Shown one piece after another: positions 345 to 55,565 of a stretch of DNA of 64,000 nt. The first letter of the stretch is position 1. Each line of letters opens with the position of its first letter. The position numbers and the translations under genes are program-made. This DNA is from Macrostomum lignano (taxonomy: Eukaryota): assembly GCA_002269645.1 (NCBI GenBank), contig NIVC01001199.1:62001-126000 (forward strand), read 5' to 3'. The notes beneath the pieces were generated by a model. The model was given only the letters and a program-made list of their open reading frames with translations. It was not told the DNA's origin and ran no database searches.

Positions 345-3300
345 AGTCAAGGAGCTCACCAACTACGAGCCGCAGGACCTCATTGAGAAGACTCTGTACC
401 ACTATGTACATGCGACCGACCTGCTGCATATGCGCTATTCTCACTATGTTTGTAAGTCTGGGCAGCGATAAGGCCCGTGTTAAACTGCTGAAACTAATTG
501 GGGGGCTTTCTGGTGCGAACTGTTCCAATAAATCCCCCGATTAGGGCGCCTTCCTATCCCCGATTAGGGCGCCTCCCTATCCCCGATTAGGGCGCCTCCC
601 TACCCCCGATTAGGCGCCTCCCTATCCCCGATTAGGGCGCCTTCCTATCCCCGATTAGGGCGCCTCCCTATCCCCGATTAGGGCGACTTCCTATCCCTGA
701 TTTGGGCGCCTCCCTATCCCCGATTAGGGCGCCTTCCTATCCCCGATTAGGGCGCCTCCCTATCCCCGATTAGGGCGCCTCCCTATCCCCGATTAGGGCG
801 CCTCCCTACCCCCGATTAGGGCGCCTTCCTATCGAACGATTAGGGCGCCTCCCTATCCCCGATTAGGGCACCTCCCTATCGAACGATTAGGGCGCCTCCC
901 TATCCCCGATTAGGGCACCTCCCTATCCCCGATTAGGGCGCCTCCCTATCCCCGATTAGGGCGCCTTCCTATCGAACGATTAGGGCGCCTTCCTATCCCC
1001 GATTAGGGCGCCTCCCTATCCCCGATTAGGGCGCCTTCCTATCCAACGATTAGGGCGCCTTCCTATCCCAGATTAGGGCGCCTTCCTATCCCAGATTAGG
1101 GCGCCTTCCTATCCCAGATTAGGGCGCCTCCCTATCGAACGATTAGGGCGCCTCCCTATCCCCGATTAGGGCACCTCCCTATCCCCGATTAGGGCGCCTC
1201 CCTATCCCTGATTAGGGCGCCTCCCTATCCCAGATTAGGGCGCCTTCCTATCCCCGATTAGGGCACCTCCCTATCCCCGATTAGGGCGCCTCCCTATCCC
1301 CGATTAGGGCGCCTCCCTACCCCCGATTAGGGCGCCTTCCTATCGAACGATTAGGGCGCCTCCCTATCCCCGATTAGGGCACCTCCCTATCGAACGATTA
1401 GGGCGCCTCCCTATCCCCGATTAGGGCACCTCCCTATCCCCGATTAGGGCGCCTTCCTATCCCCGATTAGGGCGCCTCCCTATCCCCGATTAGGGCGCCT
1501 CCCTATCCCCGATTAGGGCGCCTTCCTACCCCCGATTAGGGCGCCTCCCTATCCCCGATTAGGGCACCTCCCTATCGAACGATTAGGGCGCCTCCCTATC
1601 CCCGATTAGGGCGCCTTCCTATCCCCGATTAGGGCGCCTCCCTATCCCCGATTAGGGCACCTCCCTATCCCCGATTAGGGCGCCTCCCTATCCCCGATTA
1701 GGGCGCCTCCCTATCGAACGATTAGGCGCCTCCCTATCCCCGATTAGGGCGCCTTCCTATCCCCGATTAGGGCGCCTCCCTATCCCCGATTAGGGCGCCT
1801 CCCTATCCCCGATTAGGGCACCTCCCTATCGAACGATTAGGGCGCCTCCCTATCCCCGATTAGGGCGCCTTCCTATCCCAGATTAGGGCGCCTTCCTATC
1901 CCAGATTAGGGCGCCTCCCTATCGAACGATTAGGGCGCCTCCCTATCCCCGATTAGGGCACCTCCCTATCCCCGATTAGGGCGCCTCCCTATCCCCGATT
2001 AGGGCACCTCCCTATCGAACGATTAGGCGCCTCCCTATCCCCGATTAGGGCGCCTTCCTATCGAACGATTAGGGCGCCTTCCTATCCCCGATTAGGGCGC
2101 CTTCCTATCCCCGATTAGGGCGCCTCCCTATCCCCGATTAGGGCACCTCCCTATCGAACGATTAGGCGCCTCCCTATCCCCGATTAGGGCGCCTTCCTAT
2201 CCCCGATTAGGGCGCCTCTCTATCCCCGATTAGGGCGCCTTCCTATCCCCGATTAGGGCGCCTTCCTATCCCAGATTAGGGCGCCTCCCTATCGAACGAT
2301 TAGGGCGCCTCCGTATCCCCGATTAGGGCACCTCCCTATCCCCGATTAGGGCGCCTCCCTATCCCCGATTAGGGCACCTCCCTATCGAACGATTAGGCGC
2401 CTCCCTATCCCCGATTAGGGCGCCTCCCTATCCCCGATTAGGGCGCCTCCCTATCCCCGATTAGGGCACCTCCCTATCGAACGATTAGGGCGCCTCCCTA
2501 TCCCCGATTAGGGCACCTCCCTATCGAACGATTAGGGCGCCTCCCTATCCCCGATTAGGGCACCTCCCTATCGAACGATTAGGGCACCTCCCTATCCCAG
2601 ATTAGGGCGCCTTCCTATCCTAGATTAGGGCACCTCCCTATCGAACGATTAGGGCGCCTCCCTATCCCCGATTAGGGCACCTCCCTATCCCCGATTAGGG
2701 CGCCTCCCTATCCCCGATTAGGGCGCCTTCCTATCCCCGATTAGGGCGCCTTCCTATCCCCGATTAGGGCGCCTCCCTACCCCCGATTAGGGCGCCCCCC
2801 CCCCCTATCCCCGATTAGGGCGTGCCCAGAATTGCCGATCTTGGCACTCCTAAATCATTCCTGATAGCTACATGTACATAAATTCTATACCAAACAACAT
2901 TCCATTTCCAACAACCACTTTTTTATTTACAGTGCTCAGCAAAGGCCAAGTTACAACCAAATACTACAGGCTGCTAACGAAGAACGGCGGCTGGGTTTGG
3001 CTGCAGAGCTACATGACTATCGTGCACAATACCCGGTCTTCCAGGCCGCACTGCATCGTTAGCGTCAACTACGTGTTATCGTGAGTGGCCCCGGGACATT
3101 ATGCCAGCAATGTTTTTTATTAATTTAAGAAGAACCAAAAAGAATTACACACGTTTATTCGATTCAAAGTTTAAAAATGAAGACGCCAAAAATTCACTTG
3201 TGAACGAATTTTTGTGACCCGCATATCTTGGAATTGTCACTTAAACCTAAATCGGCCTTCAAATATCTTAGAATTGTCACTAGTACCCAAATCAACCTTC

Positions 3301-4942: not shown

Positions 4943-5629
4943 CCGCCGATTCTGTCAAGGACACCTGAAGCTAGAACTCTGGACACGAAAGCAAAACTCC
5001 GACTATCGAGGGCTCCAATCCAGATTTCGAGCTTACAAGCGTCCATGTATTGTGCAGTCCAGTCAATATTCTACTTGTAAATAATTCTATATTGCTAACA
5101 CAATACATCCTTGTTGTCGTTCTGTTTTCAATCTGTAAATCAATCAGTTTTTAATGTCAATCAATTTGTCGAATTTTAGTTGCAAAAATCTTTGAGAATG
5201 TTTACCTGCGCCCCTGACCGAAACAGTCGCGACCTGGACTGATCTCGATGACCTTGAACAATGACCTTTGCACACACGTGTGCATACTAAATTATAATCT
5301 ACTCTCTTCTAATTGTTGTAGTTGGCAGACCCGATCAGCCGCTGTTCTCCGTACGCGTTAAAAATTTTTCGCCAAACAGTCTGATAGATATGATCGATAT
5401 ATTTAAATATAAATGCATACAAAAATTAACTTTTAATTGTCTTGTCTAGCGCTTGCCTTGTGGTCCTGTGTCGTTTAAGTGATTCAGACATTGTCTCTGA
5501 AGCTTCTATTTTATGCGTTTATTTATTTCTGAGTTTATACTTTTTCAGAACCGATTAATAGAGATATTCAGAAGTAGACATCTATGAGCGCATTCTGATT
5601 TCAGAGATCTATAGATACTTAGTGTAAGA

Positions 5630-6790
5630 GATTTATAGGCAGATTCAGGTGCTGAGATCTATAGGCACATTCAGGTGCAGATATCTATAGACAGATTCAG
5701 GTGCAGAGATCTATAGGCACATTCATGTGCAGAGTTCTATAGGCTGATTAAGGTGCAGAGATCTATAGGCACATTCAGGTGCAGAGATCTATAGGCAGAT
5801 TCAGGTCCAGATATCTATAGACAGATTCAGGTGCAGAGATCTATAAGCAGATTCAGGTCCAGATATCTATAGACAGATTCAGGTGCAGAGATCTATAGGC
5901 ACATTCAGGTGCAGAGATCTATAGGCAGATTCAGGTGCAGAGATCTATAGGCAGATTCAGGTGCAGAGATCTATAGGCAGATTCAGGTCCAGATATCTAT
6001 AGACAGATTCAGGTACAGAGATCTATAGGCAGATTCAGGTGCAGAGATCTATAAGCAGATTCAGGTCCAGATATCTATAGACAGATTCAGGTGCAGAGAT
6101 CTATAGGCAGATTCAGGTCCAGATATCTATAGACAGATTCAGGTGCAGAGATCTATAGGCAGATTCAGGTCCAGATATCTATAGACAGATTCAGGTGCAG
6201 AGATCTATAGGCACATTCAGGTGCAGAGATCTATAGGCAAATTCAGGTGCAGAGATCTATAGGCACATTCAGGTGCAGAGATCTATAGGCACATTCAGGT
6301 GCAGATATCTATAGGCACATTCAGGTGCAGAGATCTATAGGCACATTCAGATGCAGAGATCTATAGGCACATTCAGGTGCAGAGATATATAGGAACATTC
6401 AGGTGCAGAGATCTATAGGCAGATTCAGGTGCAGAGATCTATATGCACATTCAGGTGCAGAGATCTATAGGCACATTCAGGTGCAGAGATATATAGGAAC
6501 ATTCAGGTGCAGAGATCTATAGGCAGATTCAGGTGCAGAGATCTATAGGCACATTCAGGTGCAGAGATCTATAGGCAGATTCAGGTGCAGAGATCTATAG
6601 ACAGATTCAGGTGCAGAGATCTATAGGCACATTCAAGTGCAGAGTTCTATAGGCACATTCAGGTGCAGATATCTATAGGCACATTCAGGTGCAGAGATCT
6701 ATAGGCAGATTCAGGTCCAGATATCTATAGGCACATTCAGGTGCAGAGATCTATAGGCAGATTCAGGCCCAGATATCTATAGGCAGATTA
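5630..6790. repeat. 26-bp minisatellite (ATTCAGGTGCAGAGATCTATAGGCAG/C)
   Basis: Period 26 (AGGTGC at 5881 and 5907), about 44 copies. Confidence 0.96.
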
Positions 6791-12509: not shown

Positions 12510-13838
12510 CTAAAGCAAAAACTTGCCAACCACAAGGCCCAGCACCATGGCCAGGACTAGGAACAGAGCCGGCGGCACCAGCGGGCCTCTGGCCGTGGCC
12601 ACGGCAGTTGAACCTGACGCCGACGAGACATTGGCAGATCCCGACGGAGAGCTGGGCGGCGACGGCCGCATGGCCAGCTTGCGCAGACGGAGATCCTGCA
12701 AGAGAGATGGTTGTTAATTTTAACTGGCCAGTTATGCACACCTCTCGTAATGCTTATGACTAATTAGGGGTAAGCGTCATAGAAAGTACGCGATGCACTT
12801 TTGGAGATTGTAGCCTAGGCGAGGGGCCCAGCCAAGGTAAGTCGCAAAAATGCCTATCCGAAAAAATACAGACGTAGTACTAATTAGATGACGAGGCATT
12901 TAGTCTTAATAGGACAGTCATTGATACTCCTGCTGTTTACCAAAATTTGCGTTAATTTTGCTTTTAAGTTTTTCACAGGTAAGTCGAATTTTTGGTAAAA
13001 AATTAAGTCGCACGGCCAGTGTAAATCTGGGAGGCTGTGCATGTATGGGTAGGAGCTTTGAACTCATTATTGAAAGCATCTCGCATTTATAACAACTCTG
13101 GTTAGTCTACTTGAGTGGGTAGAAAGTTAAACGATAACAAAACGACTCTTGGACGACTTTATCATGTACGTTCAAACGTACTTTAGAAGTACGCGAGGTA
13201 CTTTTTAAAGTACGGAAAGTTTTTCAATTACACAAAGCACTTTTCAAGACTTTGTACTTTTACAAACAAAAACAGGGTCTCACTTGTTCCGCTAGCCGAG
13301 AGTTTTCATCGCGCAGTCGCTGCAACTCCTGCTGCATTTCGTGCGCGTTTTTCGGCAAATCCGAAGGCGCCGAATTGGCCGCCGCTGGCCCCGGTTGATT
13401 GGGCGACGGCGCAGAAGCGTTGGCGACTCCGTCGGCTTCAATTTGTACAACGCGCAGCTTGGAGTCCATCAGCTTGTCGGACGAAGCCGAACGCCAGGCC
13501 TCGTCAAGAGCGGCGCCAGCCAGATTAGGAGGCGTCCTGGCTGGCATTAGCAGGCTCTGCACCATGAATTTGTGCCGGGAGCGCTGCTCGGCTGTGTCGG
13601 ACTGATCGCCAGCGCTTGGCTGCAGCATGACGGCGACTTCGACCTCGCCGCCGGCCTGAATCAGGCCGCTATTTGGCCGGACGCAGTACCGTTTCGGAGC
13701 GGTTGTCTTCACTTTAAAGGCCACGGGCTGGTCGGCAACGGGATTGCTAAGTCGCAGAGTGGTGGTGACCACCCGGTCGAATGGGCCGCGGAACACCAAC
13801 TCGGAATCTGGCTTCAGGCTTAGGATCTGGCTAGGCAT
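12510..13838 (-). CDS. VAPA/VAPB: VAMP-associated protein (MSP domain, coiled coil, C-terminal TM); exons 13838-13284 and 12695-12510, 246 aa
   Basis: MSP signature FRGPFDRVVTTTLRLSNP...FKVKTTAPKRYCVRPNSG...HKFMVQS...LMDSKLR. Donor CAA|gtgag at 13284 and acceptor tgcag|GAT at 12695 join EQ-DLRLRK, followed by the tail-anchor ALFLVLAMVLGLVVGKFLL*. Confidence 0.96.
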
Positions 13839-14039
13839 AGCGGCTGGCTAAGGCTGGGTGAAGCAATATAATTACACACTTTTCAGGTGAGAAGAGATGG
13901 AACAGCTAATTGGCTGAAACGGATTCATTAACACAATTGTCAGCAGGTTAGTAGTGACCGCCCTGGCGTCGCTGGAGTTGGGAGTTCCTCATTTCTCAAT
14001 GACATCGGATTTCTAAGCCCAACACTGCAAGTACTTAAC

Positions 14040-15854: not shown

Positions 15855-18800
15855 TTACGTGTCAGCCAAATGGAAGTCGCTGGGGTCCATCTCGCCATTC
15901 TTGCTAGCCCAATGGCCACGATTACAAGAGGCCAGCTCGTCGAACACGACCCGCTTACACTGGGCATAGTCGGCGCATTTCAATGCTCGCAAGCTGACAC
16001 TGTTCAAGTCTAAATATTCACCATCGGCTAATAATCTGCTTTGGATTCGAGCATTAATCCGTTTGGCAACCGGCACCGAGGCTGATTTGTTGGCAATCTC
16101 TTCAGCCAGTTTGACTATTCGCGACAAAGCGGCTCGCTTCGACAGTCTGGAGACTCCGCCACCGTCTAGACTGTCGGTGTCGGGCAGCTGGCGCTCAGCC
16201 GGGGTGACATTCTGCGATCGGCGAATATTTTTCTTACCCTGCGGCCCGTCAATCACTTCGGCTGTGCCGGCACTGCCGTCTACTGGCCGATACCAATTGA
16301 TTGACAGCACGGCGGTGTCGGGATCGGTCGAGCCGAGGCGCAGAGGGTCGCTGGTGCGGCCCAGCCAGGGATCGGCCACGAGCTGGTAGGCTGGGGAGGC
16401 CAAGCGATGCCGGAGACGGGGCAGGCGGCAGAGGAAGCCGCGGGCCATGTTGGCGTGACTGTAGCGACCGGCCACGTCTACGGACTGGGGTCGGGGCGGG
16501 TGACAGACGTTTGTGAATGGACTGTAAAATTGGTGAATCTATTTGTGAACAGATTTGTGACCACTTGTGAACAGAATGGATATTTAGATGGTGAACAGAA
16601 GGGCTATTTGGTGAACAGAATGACTAGTTGGTGAACAGAATGGCTGCTTGGTGAACAGAATGGCTGCTTGGTGAACAGAATGGCTGCTTGGTGAACGGAG
16701 TGACTACTTGGTGAACGGAATGGCTGCTTGGTGAACAGAATGGCTGCTTGGTGAACAGAATGGCTGCTTGGTGAACGGAATGGCTGCTTGGTGAACAGAG
16801 TGACTACTTGGTGAACAGAATGGCTGCTTGGTGAACGGAGTGACTACTTGGTGAACAGAATGGCTGCTTGGTGAACAGAATGGCTGCTTGGTGAACGGAG
16901 TGACTACTTGGTGAACAGAATGGCTGCTTGGTGAACAGAATGGCTGCTTGGTGAACAGAATGGCTGCTTGGTGAACAGAATGGCGGCTTGGTGAACGGAA
17001 TGGCTACTTGGTGAACGGAATGGCTGCTTGGTGAACAGAATGGCTATTTGGTGAACACAATAGCTAGTTGGTGAACATAATAATAGCTAGTTGGTGAACC
17101 AATTGGTGAGTTTGCGAGTTGAAAACTTATGCAACCAACAAGGCAAAAGCAAACCAACTGACCTGCAGAAACACTGGCTCAATGAAATTCGCAAGCAGGC
17201 CGCCCTACAGGCCAACATAGTTGCATAGCAGCAGCTTGTCGGAGCCGCAGTGCACAGCCAGACTGTTAGGATCTTCAGCCTCCTCTAAGCCGAATGTGCG
17301 CACCATTGAGCAATCGTACTTTTCGTAGCAGGCCAGCGAACCGTAACGAGACAGGTCCGGCTCCAGGACGCCGCATCTAAGGAGCGAATTATGAGGAGTG
17401 TGGTACTGAATAGGGATTTGTAAACAGCGGGATACTGAAATGGGGATTTTTACAGAGTGGGAACTGAAATAGATTTTAAGAGAATGGGATACTGAAGTGG
17501 GAATTTTTAAGACTAAAACACTGAAATGGGATTTTAAGAGAGTAGGATACTGAAATGGGATTATAAGAGAGTGGGATATTGAGATGGGATGTTGAGAGAG
17601 TGGGATACTGAAATGGGAATTTTAGAGAGTGCGATACTGACATACGGATTTGAAAGAATGGAAAACAATTTTTGATTTCAAAGATTTGGAGTAAAATTGA
17701 GCATTGAAAGGCGCCCTACTTACTTATCGCGAAGTAGTTCCTCTTGCGAGTGCCGTCCGAGCGGGTCGCCGCCAATCGCTCCGGCGGAGTCGCCGCCGCT
17801 GTCACCTGCGGAACAGTCGCCATCAGGCGGCGAGCTGAGCAGCAGGTGCAAAGCCAGGCCGGGTTTCAAGCGCAGCCGGTCGTCGCGATTATTTGGCTCC
17901 AACCAGCGGCCCTGGCCGGAGAAGTAGGCCGACACCTCCTGGGCTAAGCGAATGCGAAAGGCCCGCTTGGCGCACACAAAAGCGGTGCTGTCAATCACGA
18001 GCTCGCCGTAGGAGTTGTATATGTGCTCCAGCCAGTGATCGTTGACGCTGGAGCCCGTGCCCAGGGCGACCAGCTGCACTGCTGAGGATTTTTCAGGGTT
18101 TCAGTTCTACTGCACTTTGCTTTTATCTGGGATTGTTTAGTCTGCGGATTTGGGATAGCGTGGCCCAGCAACTGAGGGTCTAGAAGGTTGGCCCAGCAAC
18201 TGGGGATCTGGGAGGCTGGCCCAGCAACTAAGGATCTGGGAGGCTGGCCCAGCAACTAAGGATCTGGGAGGGTGGCCCAGCAACTAAGGATCTGGGAGGC
18301 TGGCCAAGCAACTGAGGATCTGGGAGGCTAACCCAGCAACTGGGGATCTGGGAGGCTGGCCCAGCCACTGAGGATCTAGGTTGGCCCAGCAACTGGGGAT
18401 CTGGGAGGCTGGCCCAGCAACTAAGGATTTGGGAGGCTGGCCCAGCAACTAAGGATCTGGGAGGCTGGCCCAGCAACTGAGGATCTGGAAGACTGGCGGT
18501 GGTGGCCTTGCAAGTAGGAATCTGAGAGGGTTTCTAAGAAGGCATCTGGTAAACAGACTCTATAAGCATGGCAATACCCACGGTAAAAGTGGAACCTTAA
18601 ACTAAAAAGCGACTCACTAGGCTCCGACTGTGGCAATCGCGAATCGGACAAGAATATCGCGGCCACTTTGTCGACGCCGCCAATTTTGACATCACGAAGC
18701 AGAGCGTCCAGCTGCTTCTTGCACTGATCGGCGTAGCGATCGCCAGGGAGAGCGCCAGAGGCGGCATGCACGGTCATTGAGGCCAAGGACGCGGCCGGAG

Positions 18801-20558
18801 AGGCCGAGCGATCCGCGTAGCCGCCGCCGCCACCGCTGCCACGGGCGATTACATTTAAAGCTAGCCTGGCTGCCTCCTCCTTGGCCTTCTGCTTGGACTT
18901 GGCCTCGCCCGCTTCGTACTCGCTTGGCACTCCGTCAATTGTTAAAATAGCTAAATATGCAAAATTTCCGCCCACCTGAACAGTTGTAGGGTTTGGGTAG
19001 GCCAGTGTGAAGGAACGCGGAGAGCTGCGAGATATGCGGGAATTCGGGGAAAGGAATGCGGGACTTTGGGGGAAAGGAATGCGGGACTTTGGGGGAAAGG
19101 AATGCGGGACTTTGGGGGAAAGGAATGCGGGACTTTGGGGGAAAGGAATGCGGGACTTTGGGGGAAAGGAATGCGGGACTTTGGGGGAAAGGAATGCGGG
19201 ACTTTGGGGGAAAGGAATGCGGGACTTTGGGGGAAAGGAATGTGGGACTTCGGGGGAAAGGAATGTGGGACTTCGGGAAAAGGAATGCGGGACTTCAGGC
19301 TCAGGGAAAGGAATGTGGAAATCGGAGGAAAGGGATGGGAGACTACAGGGAAAAGGGAATACGGGACTTCAGGCTCGGGAAAAGGAGATCCGGGACTTTG
19401 GGGAAAGAGGGATGTGGAACTTCGGGGAAAAGGAATGCGGGACTTCAGGGAAAAGGAATGTAGGACTTCAGGGAAAAGGAATGCGGGACTTCAGGGAAAA
19501 GGAATGTAGGACTTCAGGGAAAAGGAATGCGGGACTTCAGGGAAAAGGAATGCGGGACTTCAGGGAAAAGGAATGCGGGACTTCAGGGAAAAGGAATGCG
19601 GGACTTCAGGGAAAAGGAATGTAGGACTTCAGGGAAAAGGAATGCGGGACTTCAGGGAAAAGGAATGCGGGACTTCAGGGAAAAGGAATGTAGGACTTCA
19701 AGATTGGGGAAAATGAGATCCTAAACTTTGGGGAAAGGGGGATGCGGAACTTCGGGGAAATGGGGGGGGGCGGCGTAACTTCGGGAAAAGGGGATTGCGG
19801 GACTTCGGGGAAAACGGGGATGTGGGACTTCAGGGAAAACGAGGATGTGGAACTTCAGGGAAATGGGAAACGGGCCCAGAATTGGGAATGGGAAGCGCAG
19901 CAGAAATACATTAATTAAACAAAGAATTAAAACAGCATACCCTAGGCGCCGTAGGCCTATACTCAATGCTGCCTCGCATGGCAACCGTATACTCATTAAG
20001 AATCTGATGCGGCAATTTCTGCGATCTGCCATTAATAAAGGTGCGCAGCATCTCTTGAGCAGAATCCGATTTGGCCACATTGGCGTACCGAGGCATGCCG
20101 TGGGCCCGGTCGGTGGCATCCAGGCTCGGCATTAGGCGCACATTTCCTGACCGCTCCGATTGGGTGCGGCGATCGATGTACGGCTCCTGACTAGCGGCAG
20201 CAGGGCCAGGAGCAGCGGCAAACCCAGATGGAGCCGGGGTGACCTGACTATACTGCACCGGTTGCGGCTGCCTCTGCTGGCTAGCCAGTCTGTCTCCAGC
20301 CTCGCCGCCAAGCGCAGGAAAATCGGCATCGTCAGCTTGAAACTCTTGAGCCGGTTGGTTCGGCGCCAATAAGCCGAGGCTCTGCATCCGACTGCTCAGC
20401 GTCACGTGCGAATTCATTGGCAAGTTGAACACTTTTTTAATATGATTTTTTGATCCCAAATGCGCCTCGTACTGCGGCCAGGCCGGTATCTGGCCGGATC
20501 GGCATACCTGGCACATGTAGGGCGGACCCTCGGATTGCAGCATGTCCTGGGTAGGCAT
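15855..20558 (-). CDS. ADAD/ADAR-like protein: U1/matrin-type C2H2 zinc finger + dsRBD + catalytically degenerate adenosine deaminase (editase) domain. Exons 20558-19941, 18975-18618, 18081-17724, 17376-17163, 16484-15855. In-frame TAG at 17207-17205 (725 aa if read through, 501 aa if not; may be a pseudogene or null allele)
   Basis: Zinc finger CQVC...YEAHLGSKNH. The dsRBD KLPHQILNEY...IEYRPTAPR|VGGNFAYLAILTIDG...GEAKSKQKAKEEAARLAL is split across exons 1-2. Deaminase motifs LVALGTG, IDSTAFVCAKRAF, HLLLSSPPDGD, GSDKL...GL*GGLL..FIEPVFL, SINW, SRLSK, DYAQCK and GHWASKN align with ADAR2 (STGTK, NDCHAEIISRRSL, HLYISTSPCGD, CSDKI...GIQGSLL..FVEPIY, SVNW, SRLCK, EYQAAK, GAWVEKP). All introns are GT-AG with matching phases. 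The start ATG at 20558 is inferred. Confidence 0.88.
16590..17095. repeat. 20-bp minisatellite (GGTGAACAGAATGGCTGCTT) in ADAD-like intron 4
   Basis: Period of 20 read directly, about 25 copies. Confidence 0.95.
17410..17660. repeat. Degenerate ~28-bp repeat (GGGATACTGAAATGGGATTTT...AGAGT) in ADAD-like intron 3
   Basis: Recurring GGATACTGAAATGGG motif. Confidence 0.7.
18155..18490. repeat. 28-bp minisatellite (GGCCCAGCAACTAAGGATCTGGGAGGCT) in ADAD-like intron 2
   Basis: Period 28 (GGCCC at 18246 and 18274). Confidence 0.93.
19035..19860. repeat. 23-bp G-rich minisatellite (GGGGGAAAGGAATGCGGGACTTT / CAGGGAAAAGGAATGCGGGACTT) in ADAD-like intron 1
   Basis: Period 23 (GCGGGAC at 19081 and 19104); two subtypes arranged in blocks. 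Confidence 0.93.
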
Positions 20559-27433: not shown

Positions 27434-28873
27434 ATGGAATTTGTAACTAACTTTCGTACTCTTTCGTACGTCAATTACATCGGCGTTGACGATTTCTCCG
27501 ATCGTCTGAGCTACCAGATTAGCAGCAGCATCCTGACCGTGCTGGGCATACTGGTGACAGCGCGTACCTACGCTATGATGCCGATCGCCTGCTACATACC
27601 GCAGGGATTCGGCTTTGAGAAAGGCGGCCAGCTGGACTTTGTGGATCAATACTGTCTGACAGAGGGCACTTACGCTGTTGATGTCAGGCATTTCCATCTT
27701 CATAGCGAACGAAACGATGGCGGGCTGAGCGCCTATGCGGAGCATAAAATCTACTACTACCAGTGGGTGCCTCTTGTGCTCGGCTTCCAGGCTGTGCTGT
27801 GCTGCCTGCCCCGCCTGGTCTGGCGCATGGTCAGCTTCGACCGGGCCGGCACTGACGTCGGGCGAATCGTCAAGCTGGCCAAGGACGCCTCGGAGGACTC
27901 TAGCGGCGGCCTGACGCGCAGGCGGATGGTCACGCATATTGCCAGGTTAATCGAGAGGATGATCAAACGACGCCTGCCACCGAAGAAAGAGGAAAGTGGA
28001 CAGTTAGACGCCCGGGCGCGCCTAATTGTGGCCTGGCGCACGTTCAGTCGCATGAAGCCATCGCAGCTTAGTGGAAACTACCTGATTATTACCTATCTGC
28101 TAATCAAGTTTGCCTACCTGTTGAACGCCGTAGGCCAGTTGCTTACAATGAAAGAGTTTCTACAATTGAACTCCACGCGCTACACGATGCCTGGAATTGA
28201 TCTACTCAGAGAGGTGCTGGCCGACATCGACTGGCAGAACACCATGGTGTTCCCTCGAGTGGGCGCCTGCGCCGTGAAGATGCGCTCCGCCGCTGGAGTC
28301 AACTGGCTGTACGCCCAGTGCGCCCTGCCGGTCAACATGATCAACGAGAAGATTTACGTATTTCTGTGGTTCTGGTTCTTCGTGGTCGCCGTGGTAACAA
28401 TAGTGAGCGCATTCGGCTGGCTCTACCGTCTGGCCTGGCGCTTCAGCCTGATTAACTTTGTCAAGGACTACCTGCGTCTTGCGGACAACTATAGCGAACT
28501 AAAATCTAAAAAGCATTTGATGCACAAGTTTGTTAAGCGGTATTTGAGTCGCGACGGTGCCTTCTTAATGAAAATGATTGCGCTCAACTGCGGTGATATG
28601 GTCTGCGCAGACGTGGTCAACGCTATGTGGGAGAGCTTTCTGTTGCGCGAGAAACTTGGCGACGCCTCGAATTCACCAGAGTTGCCCGGACTGCTGGCTC
28701 TGAACTGCCACGGGCTGCCCGCTTCCAACTGCGTGAATAGGCGCAGAAAAATGCTGAGGTGGCAGAAGAGCGCACCGGAGTCAAATCAACCACCAGTGGA
28801 CTTGGACGAGCTGACTGAGCACGCCGCGGAGCTGGAGCAGTGCCGGAAGGAGGGCCGCGAGATCGACCCCTGA
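27434..28873 (+). CDS. inx: Innexin (invertebrate gap-junction protein), single exon, 479 aa
   Basis: N-terminal DDFSDRL; extracellular-loop cysteines (IACYIP...DQYCL; FPRVGAC...AQCALPVNMINEKIYVFLWFWF); YYQWVP signature; four hydrophobic segments. Confidence 0.97.
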   Translation: MEFVTNFRTLSYVNYIGVDDFSDRLSYQISSSILTVLGILVTARTYAMMPIACYIPQGFGFEKGGQLDFVDQYCLTEGTYAVDVRHFHLHSERNDGGLSAYAEHKIYYYQWVPLVLGFQAVLCCLPRLVWRMVSFDRAGTDVGRIVKLAKDASEDSSGGLTRRRMVTHIARLIERMIKRRLPPKKEESGQLDARARLIVAWRTFSRMKPSQLSGNYLIITYLLIKFAYLLNAVGQLLTMKEFLQLNSTRYTMPGIDLLREVLADIDWQNTMVFPRVGACAVKMRSAAGVNWLYAQCALPVNMINEKIYVFLWFWFFVVAVVTIVSAFGWLYRLAWRFSLINFVKDYLRLADNYSELKSKKHLMHKFVKRYLSRDGAFLMKMIALNCGDMVCADVVNAMWESFLLREKLGDASNSPELPGLLALNCHGLPASNCVNRRRKMLRWQKSAPESNQPPVDLDELTEHAAELEQCRKEGREIDP

Positions 28874-33498: not shown

Positions 33499-35610
33499 CT
33501 AAAAGTCGTCCTGGGCTTTCGCATTTTTATAATAGGTCGTTAGTTCCATATTAAGCGCAGAGCCCTCTTCTCGCATGATGGCGTCAAGATCCCTGTCCAG
33601 CCTGGCCTTCTCCTCCGCCGGCTTCTCCTCGATGATGTAATCGGGCATTGCGCTGGCGGCTCTCGCTGCACCGGCCGGCCGGTTGAAGCCTCTTCCGCCG
33701 CGGCCTCGGCGAGATGGGCCGCCTTGCCGAACGCCGCGGCTGACGCCGTAACGGCGCTGGGGTGAGTAGCCGCCGACGTTGCCAGGATAACCCGCTGGTT
33801 GGTTTCTATACTGTCGGTTAAGTCGATTACTGTTGACAAACTCAACTGTGTTTCTGTAAATCCAATTATTAATTTGAGGCATAAGTAAACTGAATCTAGC
33901 TAGTACAAGTACTAGCATCCCATGGCTCTGAGATCCTCACTCACCGATCCCATCGCTCTCAGATCCTCACTCACCGATCCCATCTCTCTCAGATCCTCAC
34001 TCACCGATCCCATTGCTCTGAGATCCTCACTCACCGATCCCATCGCTCTCAGATCCTCACTCACCGATCCCATCGCTCTCAGATCCTCACTCACCGATCC
34101 CATCGCTCTCAGATCCTCACTCACCGATCCCATCGCTCTCAGATCCTCACTCACCGATTCCATGGCTCTGAGATCCTAGCTCACTGATAGATCCCATAAC
34201 TCTTAGATCCTCACTTCAAGATACCGCAGCTCTGAGATCCCATATTCCTAGACTCGGCCTGAGATCCCATATTCCCACAGTCGGCCTGAGATCCCATATT
34301 CCCAGACTCGGCCTGAGATCCCATATTCCCTGACTCGGCCTGAGATCCCATATTCCCAGACTCGGCTTGAGATCCCATATTCCCACAGTCGGCCTGAGAT
34401 CCCATATTTCCAGACTCGGCCTGAGATCCCATATTCCCACAGTCGGCCTGAGATCCCATATTCCCAGACTCGACCTGAGATCCCATATTCCAAGACTCGG
34501 CCTGAGATCCCATTTCCCAGACTCGGCCTGAGATCCCATATTCCCTGACTCGGCCTGAGATCCCATATTCCCACAGTCGGCCTGAGATCCCATATTCCCA
34601 GACTCGGCCTGAGATCCCATATTCCCTGACTCGGCCTGAGATCCCATATTCCCAGACTCGGCTTGAGATCCCATATTCCCACAGTCGGCCTGAGATCCCA
34701 TATTTCCAGACTCGGCCTGAGATCCCATATTCCCACAGTCGGCCTGAGATCCCATATTCCCAGACTCGACCTGAGATCCCATATTCCAAGACTCGGCCTG
34801 AGATCCCATTTCCCAGACTCGGCCTGAGATCCCATATTCCCTGACTCGGCCTGAGATCCCATATTCCCACAGTCGGCCTGAGATCCCATATTCCCAGACT
34901 CGGCCTGAGATCCCATATTCCCTGACTCGGCCTGAGATCCCATATTCCCAGACTCGGCTTGAGATCCCATATTCCCACAGTCGGCCTGAGATCCCATATT
35001 TCCAGACTCGGCCTGAGATCCCATATTCCCACAGTCGGCCTGAGATCCCATATTCCCAGACTCGACCTGAGATCCCATATTCCCTGACTCGGCCTGAGAT
35101 CCCATATTCCCTGACTCGGCCTGAGATCCCATTTCCCAGACTCGGCCTGAGATCCCATATTCCCTGACTCGGCCTGAGATCCCATATTCCCTGACTCGGC
35201 CTGAGATCCCATATTCCCAGACTCGACCTGAGATCCCATATTCCAAGACTCGGCCTGAGATCCCATTTCCCAGACTCGGCCTGAGATCCCATATTCCCTC
35301 AGTCGCTCACCTGCCAACTCGGAATGCATGGCTTCGCCGGTTCGGGCCTCCCCTGCCAACAGCGCCGGCAGGGCTGCTAGCGGGAAACTGTGCTGCCCGC
35401 GCCGAAGGCACGACCACTACCTCTCGCTCTCGAAACGGCCGTTCAATTCGACCCTGAAGGACCCCCCGCAGTCGGTCATTCATCGCACCTTCGTACCGAT
35501 TGCCACCGCCACCTCTATTACGGCCGGATGGAGCGCCTCTGCGCATGTCGTAAGGCCGACGTCTGGGCAGATGACCGCCACCTCTCTGGTACTGCAGGCC
35601 TGTGAATCTG
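33499..35610 (-). CDS. CHTOP: CHTOP/Fop-like RGG-rich mRNA export/chromatin protein; exons from about 35610 to 35311 and 33853-33499; 5' start not located
   Basis: RG/RGG-rich body. The C-terminal duplicated motif KARLDRDLDAIMREEGSALNMELTTYY resembles CHTOP [27 protein letters not shown] (FoP duplication). Donor AG|gtgagc at 35311 and acceptor tacag|A at 33853 match in phase. Confidence 0.75.
33917..34180. repeat. 30-bp minisatellite (AGATCCTCACTCACCGATCCCATCGCTCTC) in the CHTOP intron
   Basis: About 8.5 near-exact copies. Confidence 0.95.
34215..35298. repeat. 27-bp minisatellite (CTGAGATCCCATATTCCCAGACTCGGC) with ~11-unit higher-order blocks, in the CHTOP intron
   Basis: Period of 27 read directly; the variant order recurs at a spacing of about 297 bp. 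Confidence 0.95.
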
Positions 35611-44527: not shown

Positions 44528-44953
44528 AAACTCAGAAGCAACCACAAGATTGGAATGGTAGGAGATTCAGCTGGGGAAGTGAGAAGTGCGAGCCTAAACG
44601 AGTTCGCAAGCCCACTTGCCCCGAGAGTCCCGTTATCTACACAAATATTCGCCCACGAAGTCCCCCAAACTCCGTGCATAGCTGGCCTTTTCCTGCGCGT
44701 TATACTCGCAGCTATTTTTGGGCAAATATTGTTTGTTCCACAAGTCGCCAAATTAGTAGAACAATATCAGCCTTACGTCCACCACATGCATGCAGGCTTA
44801 TCACTCAGAGCGTGAAAATGAGCAGACTTTGGACTAAATCTTTTACGTGCTCACTGTCTAATACGCCCTCGTATCTGAAACACAGAAATACTAATGCAGC
44901 ACGATAACTCTATTAATATGACATCACAAAGGCTATTATAGTAGATAAATGGG

Positions 44954-47192
<2,239 letters not shown>

Positions 47193-47669
47193 AGGTAGCA
47201 GCTGAAAGCAGAACCGCATTCTTCGCAGCGATTTCCCATGAAGCCAGTGGCCGAGAGTGCGGTCTCTCCAGTCTGCAGTTTCTCGATTAATTATTTTTGC
47301 GTGTATCAAACATTTTCTTGTTGCTCGCGTGGCTGCATGCACAGACTATACTAGCTGTATTCGCAGCCTGTAAGCAAGGGTTATTGTGTACACTTGCAAG
47401 GAACCTATACAGCCTTGTTCGAGTCAAACCGTGCTATGCATGTAATAAAGACGCCCAACCGCTGTGTGAATAGCAAGGCCAATTCCAGATCAAGTTGCAA
47501 TTCAAGGCTTAGAGCCCCTTGTGTAGCGGCATTGAAATGCGAAGGCGGCTAGCTGTGCGCAATACAGAACAACGACCTCTGCCATTTTTGGAACCACCAT
47601 TATGCCACCCAGTTTATTTTACATTGTTAGAATAGGGATGCTGATTGCTGATGATATTTGTAGCTAGGA

Positions 47670-50362
47670 GATTTTAGTGGTGTCTCATCCCCAATACGAG
47701 ACTGCATGGGATTTTAGTGGTGTCTCATCCCCAATATGAGACTGCATGGGATTTTAGTGGTGTCTCATCCCCAATATGAGACTGCATGGGATTTCAGTGG
47801 TGTCTCATCCCCAATATAAGACTGCATGGGATTTTAGTGGTGTCTCATCCCCAATATGAAACTGCATGGGATTTTAGTGGTGTCTCATCCCCAATATGAG
47901 ACTCCATGGGATTTTAGTGGTGTCTCATCCCCAATATGAAACTGCATGGGATTTTAGTGGTGTCTGATCCCCAATATGAGACTGCATGGGATTTTAGTGG
48001 TGTCTCATCCCCAATATGAGACTGCATGGGATTTTAGTGGTGTCTCATCCCCAACATAATACTGCATGGGATTTTAGTGGTGTCTCATCCCCAATATGAG
48101 ACTGCATGGGATTTTAGTGGTGTCTCATCCCCAATACGAGACTGCATGGGATTTTAGTGGTGTCTCATCCCCAATACGAGACTGCATGGGATTTTAGTGG
48201 TGTCTCATCCCCAATATGAGACTGCATGGGATTTTAGTGGTGTCTCATCCCCAATATGAGACTGCATGGGATTTTAGTGGTGTCTCATCCCTAATATGAG
48301 ACTGCATGGGATTTTAGTGGTGTCTCATCCCTAATATGAGACTGCATGGGATTTTAGTGGTGTCTGATCCCCAATATGAGACTGCATGGGATTTTAGTGG
48401 TGTCTCGTCCCTAATATGAGACTGCATGGGATTTTAGTGGTGTCTGATCCCCAATATGAGACTGCATGGGATTTTAGTGGTGTCTCATCCCCAACATAAT
48501 ACTGCATGGGATTTTAGTGGTGTCTCATCCCCAATATGAGACTGCATGGGATTTTAGTGGTGTCTCATCCCCAATACGAGACTGCATGGGATTTTAGTGG
48601 TGTCTCATCCCCAATACGAGACTGCATGGGATTTTAGTGGTGTCTCATCCCCAATATGAGACTGCATGGGATTTTAGTGGTGTCTCATCCCTAATATGAG
48701 ACTGCATGGGATTTTAGTGGTGTCTCATCCCTAATATGAGACTGCATGGGATTTTAGTGGTGTCTGACACCAAATATGAGACTGCATGGGATTTTAGTGG
48801 TGTCTCGTCCCTAATATGAGACTGCATGGGATTTTAGTGGTGTCTGATCCCCAATATGAGACTGCATGGGATTTTAGTGGTGTCTCGATCATCCCCAATA
48901 TGAGACTGCATGGGATTTTAGTGGTGTCTCATCCCCAATATGAGACTGCATGGGATTTTAGTGGTGTCTCATCCCCAATATGAGACTGCATGGGATTTTA
49001 GTGGTGTCTCATCCCCAATATGAGACTGCATGGGATTTTAGTGGTGTCTCATCCCCAATATAAGACTGCATAGGATTTTAGTGGTGTCTCATCCCCAATA
49101 TGAGACTGCATGGGATTTTAGTGGTGTCTCATATGATATGAGACAGCATGGGATTTTAGTGGTGTCTCATCCCCAATATGAGACTGCATGGGATTTTAGT
49201 GGTTTCTCATCCCCAATACGAGACTGCATGGGATTTTAGTGGTGTCTCATCCCCAATATGAGACTGCATGGGATTTTAGTGGCGTCTCATCCCCAATACG
49301 AGACTCCATGGGATTTTAGTGGTGTCTCATCCCCAATATGAGACTCCATGGGATTTTAGTGGTGTCTCATCCCCAATATGAGACTGCATGGGATTTTAGT
49401 GGTGTCTCATCCCCAATATGAGACTGCATGGGATTTTAGTGGTGTCTCATCCCCAATATGAGACTGCATGGGATTTTAGTGGTGTCTCATCCCCAATACG
49501 AGACTGCATGGGATTTTAGTGGTGTCTCATCCCCAATACGAGACTGCATGGGATTTTAGTGGTGTCTCATCCCCAATATGAGACTGCATGGGATTTTAGT
49601 GGTGTCTCATCCCCAATATGAGACTGCATGGGATTTTAGTGGTGTCTCATCCCCAATATGAGACTGCATGGGATTTTAGTGGTGTCTCGATCATCCCCAA
49701 TATGAGACTGCATGGGATTTTAGTGGTGTCTCGATCATCCCCAATATGAGACTGCATGGGATTTTAGTGGTGTCTCGATCATCCCCAATATGAGACTGCA
49801 TGGGATTTTAGTGGTGTCTCGATCATCCCCAATATGAGACTGCATGGGATTTTAGTGGTGTCTCGATCATCCCCAATATGAGACTGCATGGGATTTTAGT
49901 GGTATCTCGATCATCTCCAATATGAGACTGCATGGGATTTTAGTGGTGTCTCGATCATCCCCAATATGAGACTGCATGGGATTTTAGTGGTGTCTCGATC
50001 ATCCCCAATATGAGACTGCATGGGATTTTAGTGGTGTCTCATCCCCAATATGAGACTGCATGGGATTTTAGTGGTGTCTCATCCCCAATATGAGACTGCA
50101 TGGGATTTTAGTGGTGTCTCATCCCCAATACGAGACTGCATGGGATTTTAGTGGTGTCTCATCCCCAATACGAGACTGCATGGGATTTTAGTGGTGTCTC
50201 ATCCCCAATATGAGACTGCATGGGATTTTAGTGGTGTCTCATCCCCAATATGAGACTGCATGGGATTTTAGTGGTGTCTCGATCATCCCCAATATGAGAC
50301 TGCATGGGATTTTAGTGGTGTCTCATCCCCAATATGAGACTGCATGGGATTTTAGTGGTGTT
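47670..50362 (+). repeat. 40-bp satellite (GAGACTGCATGGGATTTTAGTGGTGTCTCATCCCCAATAT), about 66 copies, some with a 4-bp insertion
   Basis: Period of 40 read directly. Confidence 0.98.
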
Positions 50363-53225: not shown

Positions 53226-54295
53226 GGGATTGAGACACCACTAAACTCCCATGCAGTCTCATATTAGGGATGAGACACCACTAAAATCCCATGCAGTCTC
53301 ATATTGGGGATGAGACACCGCTAAAATCCCAGTTTGATATTGGGGATAAAAACACCGCTAAAATCCCAGTTTGATATTGGGGATAAAAACACCGCTAAAA
53401 TCCCAGTTTGATATTGGGGATAAAAAACACCGCTAAAATCCCAGTTTGATATTGGGGATAAAAACACCGCTAAAATCCCAGTTTGATATTGGGGATAAAA
53501 ACACCGCTAAAATCCCAGTTTGATATTGGGGATAAAAAACACCGCTAAAATCCCAGTTTGATATTGGGGATAAAAACACCGCTAAAATCCCAGTTTGATA
53601 TTGGGGATAAAAACACCACTAAAATCCCAGTTTGATATTGGGGATAAAAACACCACTAAAATCCCAGTTTGATATTGGGGATAAAAACACCACTAAAATC
53701 CCAGTTTGATATTGGGGATAAAAACACCGCTAAAATCCCAGTTTGATATTGGGGATAAAAACACCACTAAAATCCCAGTTTGATATTGGGGATAAAAACA
53801 CCGCTAAAATCCCAGTTTGATATTGGGGATAAAAACACCACTAAAATCCCAGTTTGATATTGGGGATAAAAACACCGCTAAAATCCCAGTTTGATATTGG
53901 GGATAAAAACACCACTAAAATCCCAGTTTGATATTGGGGATAAAAACACCACTAAAATCCCAGTTTGATATTGGGGATAAAAACACCACTAAAATCCCAG
54001 TTTGATATTGGGGATAAAAACACCGCTAAAATCCCAGTTTGATATTGGGGATAAAAACACCACTAAAATCCCAGTTTGATATTGGGGATAAAAACACCGC
54101 TAAAATCCCAGTTTGATATTGGGGATAAAAACACCACTAAAATCCCAGTTTGATATTGGGGATAAAAACACCACTAAAATCCCAGTTTGATATTGGGGAT
54201 AAAAACACCACTAAAATCCCAGTTTGATATTGGGGATAAAAACACCGCTAAAATCCCAGTTTGATATTGGGGATAAAAACACCACTAAAATCCCA
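53226..54295 (-). repeat. Inverted copy of the 40-bp satellite (2-3 units, 53226-53330) grading into a derived 37-bp satellite (AGTTTGATATTGGGGATAAAAACACCGCTAAAATCCC)
   Basis: ATGCAGTCTCATATTGGGGATGAGACACCACTAAAATCCC is the exact reverse complement of the 47.7-50.4 kb unit. The 37-mer shares ATATTGGGGAT and ACACCRCTAAAATCCC. Confidence 0.95.
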
Positions 54296-54935: not shown

Positions 54936-54966
<31 letters not shown>

Positions 54967-54972
54967 GCAGGC

Positions 54973-55029
<57 letters not shown>

Positions 55030-55036
55030 GGCAGGC

Positions 55037-55067
<31 letters not shown>

Positions 55068-55078
55068 GACAGACAAAC

Positions 55079-55153
<75 letters not shown>

Positions 55154-55164
55154 CTAAGACAGGC

Positions 55165-55214
<50 letters not shown>

Positions 55215-55290
55215 GCAGGCAGAGAGACAGACAGACAGACAGACAGAGACAGACAAACAGAGACAGACAGACAGACAGAGACAGACAAAC

Positions 55291-55377
<87 letters not shown>

Positions 55378-55516
55378 CTAAGACAGGCAGACAGACAGAC
55401 AGACAGGCAGACAGACAGACAGACAGACACTAAGACAGGCAGACAGACAGACAGACAGGCAGACAGACAGACAGACAGACACTAGGACAGACAGGCAGGC
55501 AGGCAGACAGACACTA

Positions 55517-55565
<49 letters not shown>

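What the first reader, a model, noticed from the sequence alone, without database searches (positions are those of the whole stretch)
17163..17376. In-frame amber (TAG) codon at a conserved Gln inside an otherwise intact ADAR-family gene: nonsense allele, readthrough, or A-to-I recoding site
Seen: exon 4 reads ...GAC AAG CTG CTG CTA TGC AAC TAT GTT GGC CTG TAG GGC GGC CTG CTT (DKLLLCNYVGL*GGLL), with the TAG at 17207-17205. The 14 codons after it and the 630-nt last exon are open and keep ADAR fold and IP6-pocket residues (SINW, SRLSK, YAQCK, GHWASK). All five exons splice in phase. Known: the ADAR2 equivalent is GIQGSLL, so the codon is normally CAG. UAG is the preferred ADAR target triplet, and UAG-to-UIG editing reads as Trp (the HDV amber/W site). 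Inference: the simplest explanation is a recent C-to-T nonsense change in a duplicated paralogue, or a consensus error. The exciting alternative is a pseudo-editase whose full-length form needs readthrough or A-to-I editing, which would be an editing-sensing feedback switch. The stop is 42 nt upstream of the last junction, so by the 50-55-nt rule a 501-aa ZnF-dsRBD truncated product could escape NMD.
Basis: partly seen in the sequence, partly recalled or inferred. Interest (0 to 1): 0.75.

Follow-up and report, generated by a model that had tools for sequence, protein, structure and literature searches.

The report
Nonsense mutation in one gene copy
One of three near-identical copies of a catalytically dead ADAR-like (ADAD-type) gene in the triplicated genome of the flatworm Macrostomum lignano has a single C-to-T change that turns an invariant glutamine codon into a stop, which is most likely an ordinary young null allele and not an RNA-editing or readthrough switch.

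Summary
A five-exon, 725-codon minus-strand gene (20558-15855) has one in-frame TAG at 17207-17205, which is codon 502 and lies 42 nt before the last exon junction. The window is Macrostomum lignano assembly Mlig_3_7, contig NIVC01001199.1. GenBank already annotates this copy as a CDS that ends at this TAG (PAA70899.1).

The same assembly holds two more syntenic copies (LIM-innexin-this gene-VAP). They are about 99% identical in coding sequence, and both read CAG. This fits the published three-subgenome structure of the species.

The glutamine is Q in 147 of 150 distant relatives and never Trp. The protein is an ADAD-like pseudo-deaminase: the zinc-ligand and catalytic positions read T, F, D and G in place of H, E, C and C.

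I found no duplex over the TAG, no readthrough context and no structure after the stop. The 672 nt after the TAG carry no private change, so the change is very recent or is a consensus error. That also means the dN/dS test on exon 5 has no power.

Best reading: a recent nonsense allele in one redundant homeolog (about 0.75). An assembly or polishing error is about 0.14, a functional truncated product about 0.05, and editing or readthrough rescue about 0.03. No reads were available to settle this.

The parts
19941..20558 (-). Exon 1 (618 nt). It holds the ATG at 20558-20556, a low-complexity N-terminus with a C-x2-C-x12-H-x5-H pattern, and the first half of the dsRBD. The donor is AGG|GTATGC.
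   Evidence: It is 100% identical to L001, the GenBank locus that carries PAA70899.1.
18618..18975 (-). Exon 2 (358 nt). It holds the second half of the dsRBD, a poly-Gly (GGC) tract and the linker. Seven of the eight coding substitutions private to this copy lie here.
   Evidence: dsrm 23.4 bits against a cut-off of 23 when scanned alone.
17724..18081 (-). Exon 3 (358 nt, or 355 nt with the NAGNAG acceptor at 18078). It starts the deaminase-like domain. 'DSTAF' replaces 'DCHAE' and 'PDGD' replaces 'PCGD'.
17163..17376 (-). Exon 4 (214 nt), which carries the premature stop.
17205..17207 (-). In-frame TAG at codon 502. Base 17207 is T on the minus strand here and C in both homeologous copies. 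It sits at a Gln that is invariant across the family.
   Evidence: private to this copy; Q in 147/150 and 60/60 relatives. The GenBank CDS for this copy ends exactly here (gene end L001:13432 = window 17205).
15855..16484 (-). Exon 5 (630 nt including TAA). It encodes the C-terminal half of the deaminase fold with the IP6-pocket-like Y..K and W.sK motifs. It is open and 100% identical in nucleotides to the homeolog L003.

Best explanation
The window comes from the neopolyploid flatworm Macrostomum lignano. Most of its genome exists as three diverged subgenome copies.

The gene is an ADAD-type member of the ADAR family. It has one dsRBD and a deaminase-fold domain whose zinc-ligand and catalytic positions read T, F, D and G in place of H, E, C and C, so it cannot deaminate.

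In this one copy a recent C-to-T transition changed the invariant Gln codon CAG to TAG. The product is cut at residue 501. That removes about 220 residues, roughly the C-terminal half of the deaminase fold, including the conserved IP6-pocket-type residues. The truncated domain is therefore expected not to fold.

The two other homeologs are intact and supply the function, so the null allele is tolerated. This is the first step of losing one homeolog after genome duplication.

Shown here: the TAG, the gene model, the three copies, CAG in the other two, the conservation of the Gln, and the dead active site.

Inferred: that the T is real in the animals, that the truncated product is inactive, and that redundancy explains why the allele is tolerated.
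For: - Identity of the window. PAA70899.1 (BOX15_Mlig028402g1, 526 aa, partial) matches the window translation and ends at ...CNYVGL. Its locus is GCA_002269645.1 NIVC01001199.1, and its DNA is 100% identical to the window exons.
- Three copies. Two more loci have the same gene order, innexin then this gene then VAP, and both have intact ORFs of 2187 and 2190 nt.
- Three-way coding alignment. Codon 502 is T/C/C. The T is private to the window copy.
- Divergence between copies. dS is 1.7-2.9% and dN/dS is 0.15-0.21. This matches the published three subgenomes (S, L1, L2), where 3-copy blocks make up about 70% of Mlig_3_7 and the SNP rate is 1.1% in coding sequence and 2.2% overall (PMC10733133).
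- Private mutations are normal for this copy. The flanking introns carry 7 private SNVs in 550 aligned bases, or 1.3%. One private exonic change is therefore not an outlier. 3.8% of all possible single-base changes in this CDS create a stop.
- Nothing else is broken. All splice sites are canonical. The 672 nt after the TAG carry no private substitution. The neighbouring innexin gene is intact, and the 185-aa first coding block of VAP is open and 98-100% identical, in all three copies.
- Importance of the residue. Q in 147/150 representatives, including catalytically dead ones, and in 60/60 in a second alignment.
- What is lost. In the AlphaFold model the domain is confident (pLDDT above 90 around the site). 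The part after residue 505 holds 4 strands and 6 helices. The fold matches ADAR1 and ADAR2 deaminase domains, with TM-score up to 0.82.
- Quality of the assembly. It was polished with Illumina DNA and RNA-seq reads (PMC5730564). A plain long-read miscall to a base that no copy carries should have been corrected.
Against: - I could not inspect any independent read, transcript or second assembly for this copy. The annotated truncated CDS is translated from the same genome sequence, so it is not independent evidence.
- 93% of short read pairs map to more than one locus in this genome (PMC10733133). Polishing is therefore less reliable here than usual.
- Outside a cluster in exon 2, the TAG is the only private coding change in this copy. 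A very recent mutation predicts that, and so does an error.
- The absence of decay downstream would also fit continued translation of exon 5.
Confidence: 0.75

Rival explanations
1. Assembly or polishing artefact. The animals carry CAG in this copy too, and the T is a consensus error in a region where three 99%-identical copies confuse read placement.
For: - This is a single base in a single assembly. Outside the exon 2 cluster it is the only private coding change.
- 93% of read pairs map to more than one locus.
- UniRef has proteins from the older ML2 assembly that match the two intact copies (P0001 matches L003, P0005 matches L002). It has none for this copy, so no second assembly confirms the T.
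Against: - The contig was polished with Pilon using Illumina DNA and RNA-seq reads.
- Mis-placed reads from the paralogues would push the base towards C, not towards a T that no other copy has.
- This copy demonstrably has its own private SNVs nearby, 1.3% in the introns. Private variants are therefore expected.
- Long-read consensus errors are mostly indels, not transitions (general knowledge).
Confidence: 0.14
2. The mutation is real and the 501-aa product is used. On this view a dsRBD-containing protein without an intact deaminase fold has a function of its own, for example competing for dsRNA. Its mRNA would be spared from nonsense-mediated decay because the stop lies 42 nt before the last junction.
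For: - The stop is 42 nt from the last junction.
- The dsRBD lies upstream of the stop and is modelled with confidence.
- A transcript-based gene model exists at this locus.
Against: - The product would carry about 170 residues of a half deaminase fold that probably cannot fold.
- No private change suggests adaptation.
- The 50-55 nt rule comes from mammals and is untested in flatworms (general knowledge).
- The gene models are genome-guided and reads map to several copies, so expression of this copy specifically is not shown.
Confidence: 0.05
3. Programmed recoding. The full-length protein would be made from this copy either by A-to-I editing of UAG to UIG (Trp) or by stop-codon readthrough (near-cognate decoding of UAG usually inserts Gln). 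This would make expression conditional.
For: - U-A-G is the neighbour context ADARs prefer (general knowledge).
- Flatworms have active ADARs. Planarian ADAR1 and ADAR2 have the CHAE motif, and ADAR2-dependent mRNA editing has been shown (PMC8797187).
- Exon 5 is fully intact.
- Any leaky decoding as Gln would restore the ancestral residue.
Against: - No duplex over the site. Exon 4 plus its flanks folds no better than shuffled sequence (z = +0.49). No inverted-repeat arm covers the TAG. The best pairing partner anywhere in the pre-mRNA gives -44.4 kcal/mol, and 26 of 31 control exon segments pair at least as well.
- Trp is never seen at this position, 0 of 150 relatives.
- The context UAG-GGC is not one of the known stimulatory motifs. 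The 120 nt after the stop are no more structured than shuffles (z = +0.40).
- The stop is absent from both homeologs. It is therefore not a conserved feature.
- The assembly was polished partly with RNA-seq and still reads A at 17206. This is only weak evidence against heavy editing.
Confidence: 0.03

Closest known systems
ADAD1/TENR and ADAD2 (adenosine deaminase domain-containing proteins), including the lophotrochozoan ADAD class
   Same: - One dsRBD followed by an ADAR-type deaminase fold with mutated zinc ligands.
- The nearest catalytically dead relatives are mollusc proteins named ADAD1 or ADAD1-like, from Aplysia, Physella, Littorina, Haliotis and Potamilus. Aplysia and Physella have the same T/S-L-D pattern at the H, E and C positions.
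- ADAD is described as a conserved, mostly single-copy class in lophotrochozoans (PMC6651903).
   Different: - Only about 23-36% identical to any relative. No relative scores better than E = 1e-21.
- All four active-site positions are altered. [quoted passage not shown]
- It has a long N-terminus that is modelled as disordered and carries a C2H2-like pattern found in none of 149 relatives.
- Germline expression and function were not tested.
Early loss of one homeolog after whole-genome duplication (a nascent pseudogene)
   Same: A single disabling point mutation in one of three syntenic copies that differ by 1-3%. The other copies remain intact and under purifying selection. The species is documented as having three subgenomes (PMC10733133).
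   Different: There are no secondary lesions yet. The event is too young to show relaxed constraint and may still be polymorphic in the DV1 line.
Amber/W editing site of hepatitis delta virus, and other ADAR stop-codon recoding
   Same: A UAG whose middle A, if edited, would read as Trp and open a downstream frame.
   Different: Here there is no base-paired structure around the site. Trp is foreign to this invariant Gln position. The stop is not conserved in sister copies.
Programmed stop-codon readthrough in animals (UGA-CUAG type, or stimulated by a downstream structure)
   Same: An in-frame stop followed by a long open extension with recognisable domain sequence.
   Different: The stop is UAG followed by GGC. 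There is no stimulatory motif or structure, and the stop is not conserved.

Membership tests
ADAR/ADAT deaminase-fold family (Pfam A_deamin, PF02137) | Significant full-length match to the adenosine-deaminase (editase) domain, and the ADAR fold | tested here: met
   A_deamin 86.8 bits against a cut-off of 27, covering profile positions 1-326 of 329. The model of the intact homeolog matches ADAR1 and ADAR2 deaminase domains with E = 1e-17 to 1e-20 and TM-score up to 0.82.
Catalytically active ADAR | Zinc ligands His and two Cys, plus the catalytic Glu (the motifs HAE, PCG and SCSDK) | tested here: not met
   H to T, E to F and C to D. The SCSDK Cys column holds G, with a Cys one position earlier. 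In 150 relatives these columns are H in 129, E in 120, C in 130 and C in 134.
ADAD (TENR-like) class | A single dsRBD plus a deaminase-like domain with mutated zinc ligands | tested here: met
   One dsrm at 23.4 bits against a cut-off of 23 when scanned alone, and a dsRBD fold in the model. The active site is dead. The closest dead relatives are named ADAD1 or ADAD1-like.
ADAD (TENR-like) class | Groups with ADADs in a phylogeny; expression restricted to the germline | not tested
   No tree was built and no expression data were available. Similarity to ADAD-named proteins (E about 1e-17 to 1e-21) is no stronger than similarity to active ADARs.
A-to-I amber-to-Trp recoding site | The target A lies in a stable intramolecular duplex (an editing-complementary sequence) | tested here: not met
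   Local fold z = +0.49. No inverted repeat covers the site. The best duplex in the pre-mRNA is weaker than for 26 of 31 control exon segments.
A-to-I amber-to-Trp recoding site | A/G mixture in cDNA at a position that is A in the genome | not testable with these tools
   No read data can be reached. The collection holds no independent transcript or contig for this copy.
A-to-I amber-to-Trp recoding site | The recoded residue (Trp) is compatible with the protein | tested here: not met
   The column is Q in 147, E in 1, N in 1 and a gap in 1 of 150 relatives. Trp never occurs. The column is invariant in the 60-sequence alignment.
Programmed stop-codon readthrough | The stop codon is conserved in relatives | tested here: not met
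   Both homeologs read CAG. All named cluster members other than this copy have Q.
Programmed stop-codon readthrough | A stimulatory 3' context or a downstream RNA structure | tested here: not met
   The context is UAG GGC GGC. The 120 nt after the stop fold with z = +0.40.
Programmed stop-codon readthrough | The extension stays under purifying selection after the stop arose | tested here: inconclusive
   There are zero private substitutions in the 672 nt after the TAG. There is therefore no signal either way.
Pseudogene of a duplicated gene | A disabling mutation, with an intact paralogue in the same genome | tested here: met
   A TAG at codon 502 of 725, and two intact syntenic copies.
Pseudogene of a duplicated gene | Relaxed constraint or accumulated secondary lesions | tested here: not met
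   No other stop, frameshift or splice-site change is present. dN/dS against the other copies is 0.16-0.21. At most this is a nascent pseudogene or a null allele.
Variant nuclear genetic code (TAG = Gln) | TAG used repeatedly at Gln positions | tested here: not met
   The other 35 Gln codons in this gene are 26 CAG and 9 CAA. This is the only in-frame TAG, and the homeologs use CAG here.

The most novel reading that the evidence does not exclude
The TAG-bearing homeolog would be a conditional gene. Full-length ADAD-like protein would be made from it only when the UAG is edited by an active ADAR, or read through. Otherwise it would give a short dsRBD protein that escapes NMD. That would couple the output of a pseudo-editase to the cell's editing or termination state.
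Probability: 0.03. Interest if true: 0.8.

Novelty: new member of a known kind. Interest (0 to 1): 0.12.

Why it matters
If the best reading holds, this is a routine example of early gene-copy loss in a young polyploid. It has modest use as a copy-specific marker, and as a reminder that M. lignano gene models must be checked copy by copy.

Two by-products have some value. The gene family is a highly divergent flatworm ADAD-type pseudo-deaminase that I did not find discussed in the searchable literature. The Gln at this position is among the 14 invariant residues of the ADAR/ADAD fold, and it is kept even in dead members. That points to a structural role and not a catalytic one.

The finding would be important only if the 3% recoding scenario were true.

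Tried and rejected
- Alternative splicing around the stop. Exon 4 is 214 nt, so skipping it shifts the frame. Four in-frame GT sites lie upstream of the TAG. The nearest, TAT|GTTGGC at 17217, would remove 18 residues that include the invariant G-x-Q-G and the conserved Pro. It is a poor donor and is present in all three copies alike. I rejected this as a rescue route, and there is no evidence that the site is used.
- Variant genetic code. Rejected.
- Editing-complementary sequence. I ran a local fold, an inverted-repeat search and a duplex scan of the whole pre-mRNA against control exon segments. All were negative.
- Structure that could stimulate readthrough. Negative.
- Independent sequence evidence. 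The 33-aa ORF that ends at the TAG, and the UniRef protein P0001, are not on record on any other contig. The homology search found no transcript-derived or read-derived fragments and no orthologue from another Macrostomum species.
- dN/dS on exon 5 alone. Not informative, because there are zero private changes.
- Rfam scan of the window. No hits.
- Literature search for the gene identifiers Mlig013792 and Mlig028402. No hits.
Full report
**1. The observation**

The minus strand at 17240-17181 reads GAC AAG CTG CTG CTA TGC AAC TAT GTT GGC CTG TAG GGC GGC CTG CTT GCG..., with the TAG at 17207-17205. I rebuilt the gene from open stretches and splice signals. The exons are:
- exon 1: 20558-19941
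- exon 2: 18975-18618
- exon 3: 18081-17724, with a NAGNAG alternative acceptor at 18078
- exon 4: 17376-17163
- exon 5: 16484-15855

Their lengths are 618, 358, 358, 214 and 630 nt. All have GT-AG borders. Joined, they give 725 codons plus TAA, with a single internal stop at codon 502. The stop ends 42 nt before the last exon junction, and 14 codons of exon 4 follow it.

**2. What the gene is**

Pfam finds a full-length A_deamin domain (86.8 bits, residues 331-709). It also finds one dsRBD: 18.9 bits in the whole protein and 23.4 bits when scanned alone, against a cut-off of 23. The best solved relatives are the ADAR1, Hydra ADAR, ADR-2 and ADAR2 deaminase domains.

The active site is gone:
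- 'DCHAE' is 'DSTAF'.
- 'PCGD' is 'PDGD'.
- The Cys of 'SCSDK' is replaced, giving 'HCGSDK'.

Across 150 representative relatives these columns are H in 129, E in 120, C in 130 and C in 134.

The nearest catalytically dead relatives are mollusc proteins named ADAD1 or ADAD1-like. Aplysia and Physella share the same T/S-L-D pattern. ADAD is a recognised lophotrochozoan class with one dsRBD (PMC6651903). Mouse ADAD1 and ADAD2 are inactive, germ-cell specific and needed for male fertility, and they do not affect editing (PMC7360552).

The protein is very divergent. No relative outside its own cluster scores better than E = 2e-21 among 1.84 billion representatives. An AlphaFold model of the intact homeolog has a confident dsRBD and deaminase domain and matches ADAR1 and ADAR2 structures, with TM-score up to 0.82. 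Residues 1-161, including the supposed zinc finger, are modelled as disordered. The C-x2-C-x12-H-x5-H pattern gets only a sub-threshold zf-met hit and occurs in none of 149 relatives.

**3. Where the window comes from, and the other copies**

The homology search returned one cluster, from Macrostomum lignano. Its members are:
- PAA70899.1 (BOX15_Mlig028402g1, partial, 526 aa). It is the window copy exactly and ends at ...CNYVGL.
- PAA62120.1 and PAA54659.1 (Mlig013792g1 and g3), plus two UniRef entries from the older ML2 assembly. All of these have VGLQGGLL.

The three GenBank proteins map to three contigs of assembly GCA_002269645.1 (NIVC01001199.1, NIVC01001971.1 and NIVC01002874.1). All three contigs have the same gene order: LIM, innexin, this gene, VAP. 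The annotated CDS of the window copy ends at window position 17205, which is the TAG itself. The truncated model is therefore already public, though nobody has commented on it.

This matches published work:
- About 70% of Mlig_3_7 lies in three-copy paralogous blocks that correspond to subgenomes S, L1 and L2.
- SNP divergence is 1.1% in coding sequence and 2.2% overall.
- Indel differences are large.
- 93% of read pairs map to more than one locus (PMC10733133).

**4. Comparing the three copies**

Against the window copy, the exons of the other two are 94.9-100% identical. Exon 3 is identical to L002, and exon 5 is identical to L003. In the three-way coding alignment, codon 502 is T in the window and C in both others.

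The window copy has eight private coding substitutions. Seven fall within 193 nt of exon 2. The eighth is the TAG. Pairwise dS is 1.7-2.9% and dN/dS is 0.15-0.21. The family has therefore been under purifying selection in all three copies.

The introns next to exon 4 hold 7 window-private SNVs in 550 aligned bases, or 1.3%. This copy is thus a separate lineage with its own mutations, and one private exonic change is not an outlier. 3.8% of all possible single-base changes in this CDS make a stop, and 2.6% of transitions do.

There are no private changes in the 672 nt after the TAG. At the intron rate about 8 would be expected if that stretch had been free to drift since the copies separated. 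The stop is therefore much younger than the copies. This also means a dN/dS test on exon 5 cannot separate 'too young to decay' from 'still translated'.

All splice sites are canonical. The neighbouring innexin gene is intact, and the first coding block of VAP (185 aa, all that was compared) is open and 98-100% identical, in all three copies.

**5. How much the lost part matters**

The Gln is Q in 147 of 150 representatives (E in 1, N in 1, a gap in 1) and never Trp. It is kept in catalytically dead members too. It is one of 14 invariant columns in a 60-sequence alignment.

In the model the residue lies between two short helices in a region with pLDDT above 90. Everything after it would be missing: four strands and six helices, including Y..K and W.sK motifs that line up with IP6-contacting residues of ADAR2. 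From what is known of ADAR2, where IP6 is buried in the core, a half domain is unlikely to fold. That last step is inference.

**6. Tests of the recoding alternatives**

Editing:
- Exon 4 with its flanks folds no better than shuffled sequence (z = +0.49).
- None of the 10 inverted repeats in the gene covers the TAG.
- The best partner for the 51-nt TAG segment anywhere in the pre-mRNA gives -44.4 kcal/mol. The mean for 31 control exon segments is -49.9, and 26 of them pair at least as well.
- Editing would give Trp, which never occurs at this site.
- Planarians do have active ADARs (PMC8797187), so the enzyme is probably available. The substrate features are missing.

Readthrough:
- The context is UAG GGC, and the following 120 nt are unstructured (z = +0.40).
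- The stop is not shared by the homeologs.

Other routes:
- A variant genetic code is excluded. The gene has 26 CAG and 9 CAA codons and one TAG, and the homeologs use CAG here.
- An in-frame cryptic donor at 17217 (TAT|GTTGGC) could skip the stop. It is weak and would delete 18 residues including the invariant motif.

**7. Real mutation or error?**

Mlig_3_7 was assembled with Canu from PacBio reads. It was then polished with Pilon using Illumina DNA and RNA-seq reads (PMC5730564).

A long-read miscall to a base absent from all copies should have been corrected, and mis-placed paralogous reads would push the base towards C. This favours a real T. Multi-mapping weakens the argument, and I could reach no independent data:
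- The collection holds no other contig or transcript for this copy.
- The gene models are genome-guided, so the truncated GenBank protein is not independent evidence.

**8. Verdict**

My estimates for the four readings are:

| Reading | Probability |
|---|---|
| Real, recent nonsense allele in one of three redundant homeologs, with an inactive product | about 0.75 |
| Consensus or polishing error | about 0.14 |
| Real mutation with a functional truncated product | about 0.05 |
| Editing-dependent or readthrough-dependent expression | about 0.03 |

The finding is real as sequence but ordinary in biology. It fits what is expected in a neopolyploid at the start of homeolog loss. Phased genomic and cDNA reads would settle it.

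Noticed in passing
window 16589-17081, 17396-17640, 18161-18497, 19034-19867 (introns 4, 3, 2 and 1 of the gene); compare L002 and L003: Every intron of the gene is largely filled by its own minisatellite, with periods of 20, 29, 28 and 23-25 nt. Copy numbers differ strongly between the three homeologs. Intron lengths in window/L002/L003 are 965/1079/982, 536/2249/1427, 347/169/380 and 678/386/438 nt.
   Followed up: partly
window 18078-18084 (acceptor of exon 3): There is a NAGNAG tandem acceptor (CAG|CAG). Public proteins from these loci use both forms ('SEPTVQLV' and 'SEPMQLV'), which differ by one codon.
   Followed up: partly
window 18618-18975 (exon 2), about CDS positions 636-828: Seven of the eight private coding substitutions of this copy cluster within 193 nt, next to a GGC (poly-Gly) tract that encodes 5, 8 or 9 Gly in the three copies. 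Exon 3 is identical to L002 and exon 5 is identical to L003. This mosaic suggests recombination or gene conversion between homeologs.
   Followed up: partly
L003:11670-12039 compared with protein PAA54659.1 (P0004): The GenBank protein for Mlig013792g3 has 5 Gly where its own genomic locus encodes 9. The model was probably made by mapping a transcript from another copy, leaving a 12-nt gap. Copy assignment in this annotation is not always clean.
   Followed up: no
It occurs in none of 149 relatives and lies in a region modelled with pLDDT about 30. It may be a lineage-specific U1/matrin-type finger, or it may be chance.
   Followed up: partly
window 13263-13847 (minus strand) and 27434-28873 (plus strand): Two neighbouring genes flank this one: a VAP-type MSP-domain protein and a single-exon innexin (479 aa, TGA stop). 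Innexin is intact in all three copies. For VAP only the first 185-aa coding block was compared, and it is open and 98-100% identical in all three. The VAP gene is called only at L002 in the gene lists returned for the three loci.
   Followed up: partly
window 535-2800, 5627-6789, 34232-35298, 44938-47198, 47670-50361, 53294-54295, 54936-57670, 58751-60125: The window contains very long tandem arrays. (ATAG)n spans 2.3 kb, (CAGA)n spans 2.7 kb, and minisatellites with periods of 20-40 nt span 1-2.7 kb each. They account for the extreme GC-skew and AT-skew blocks in the composition profile. This agrees with the reported 15% simple and tandem repeat content of the genome.
   Followed up: no
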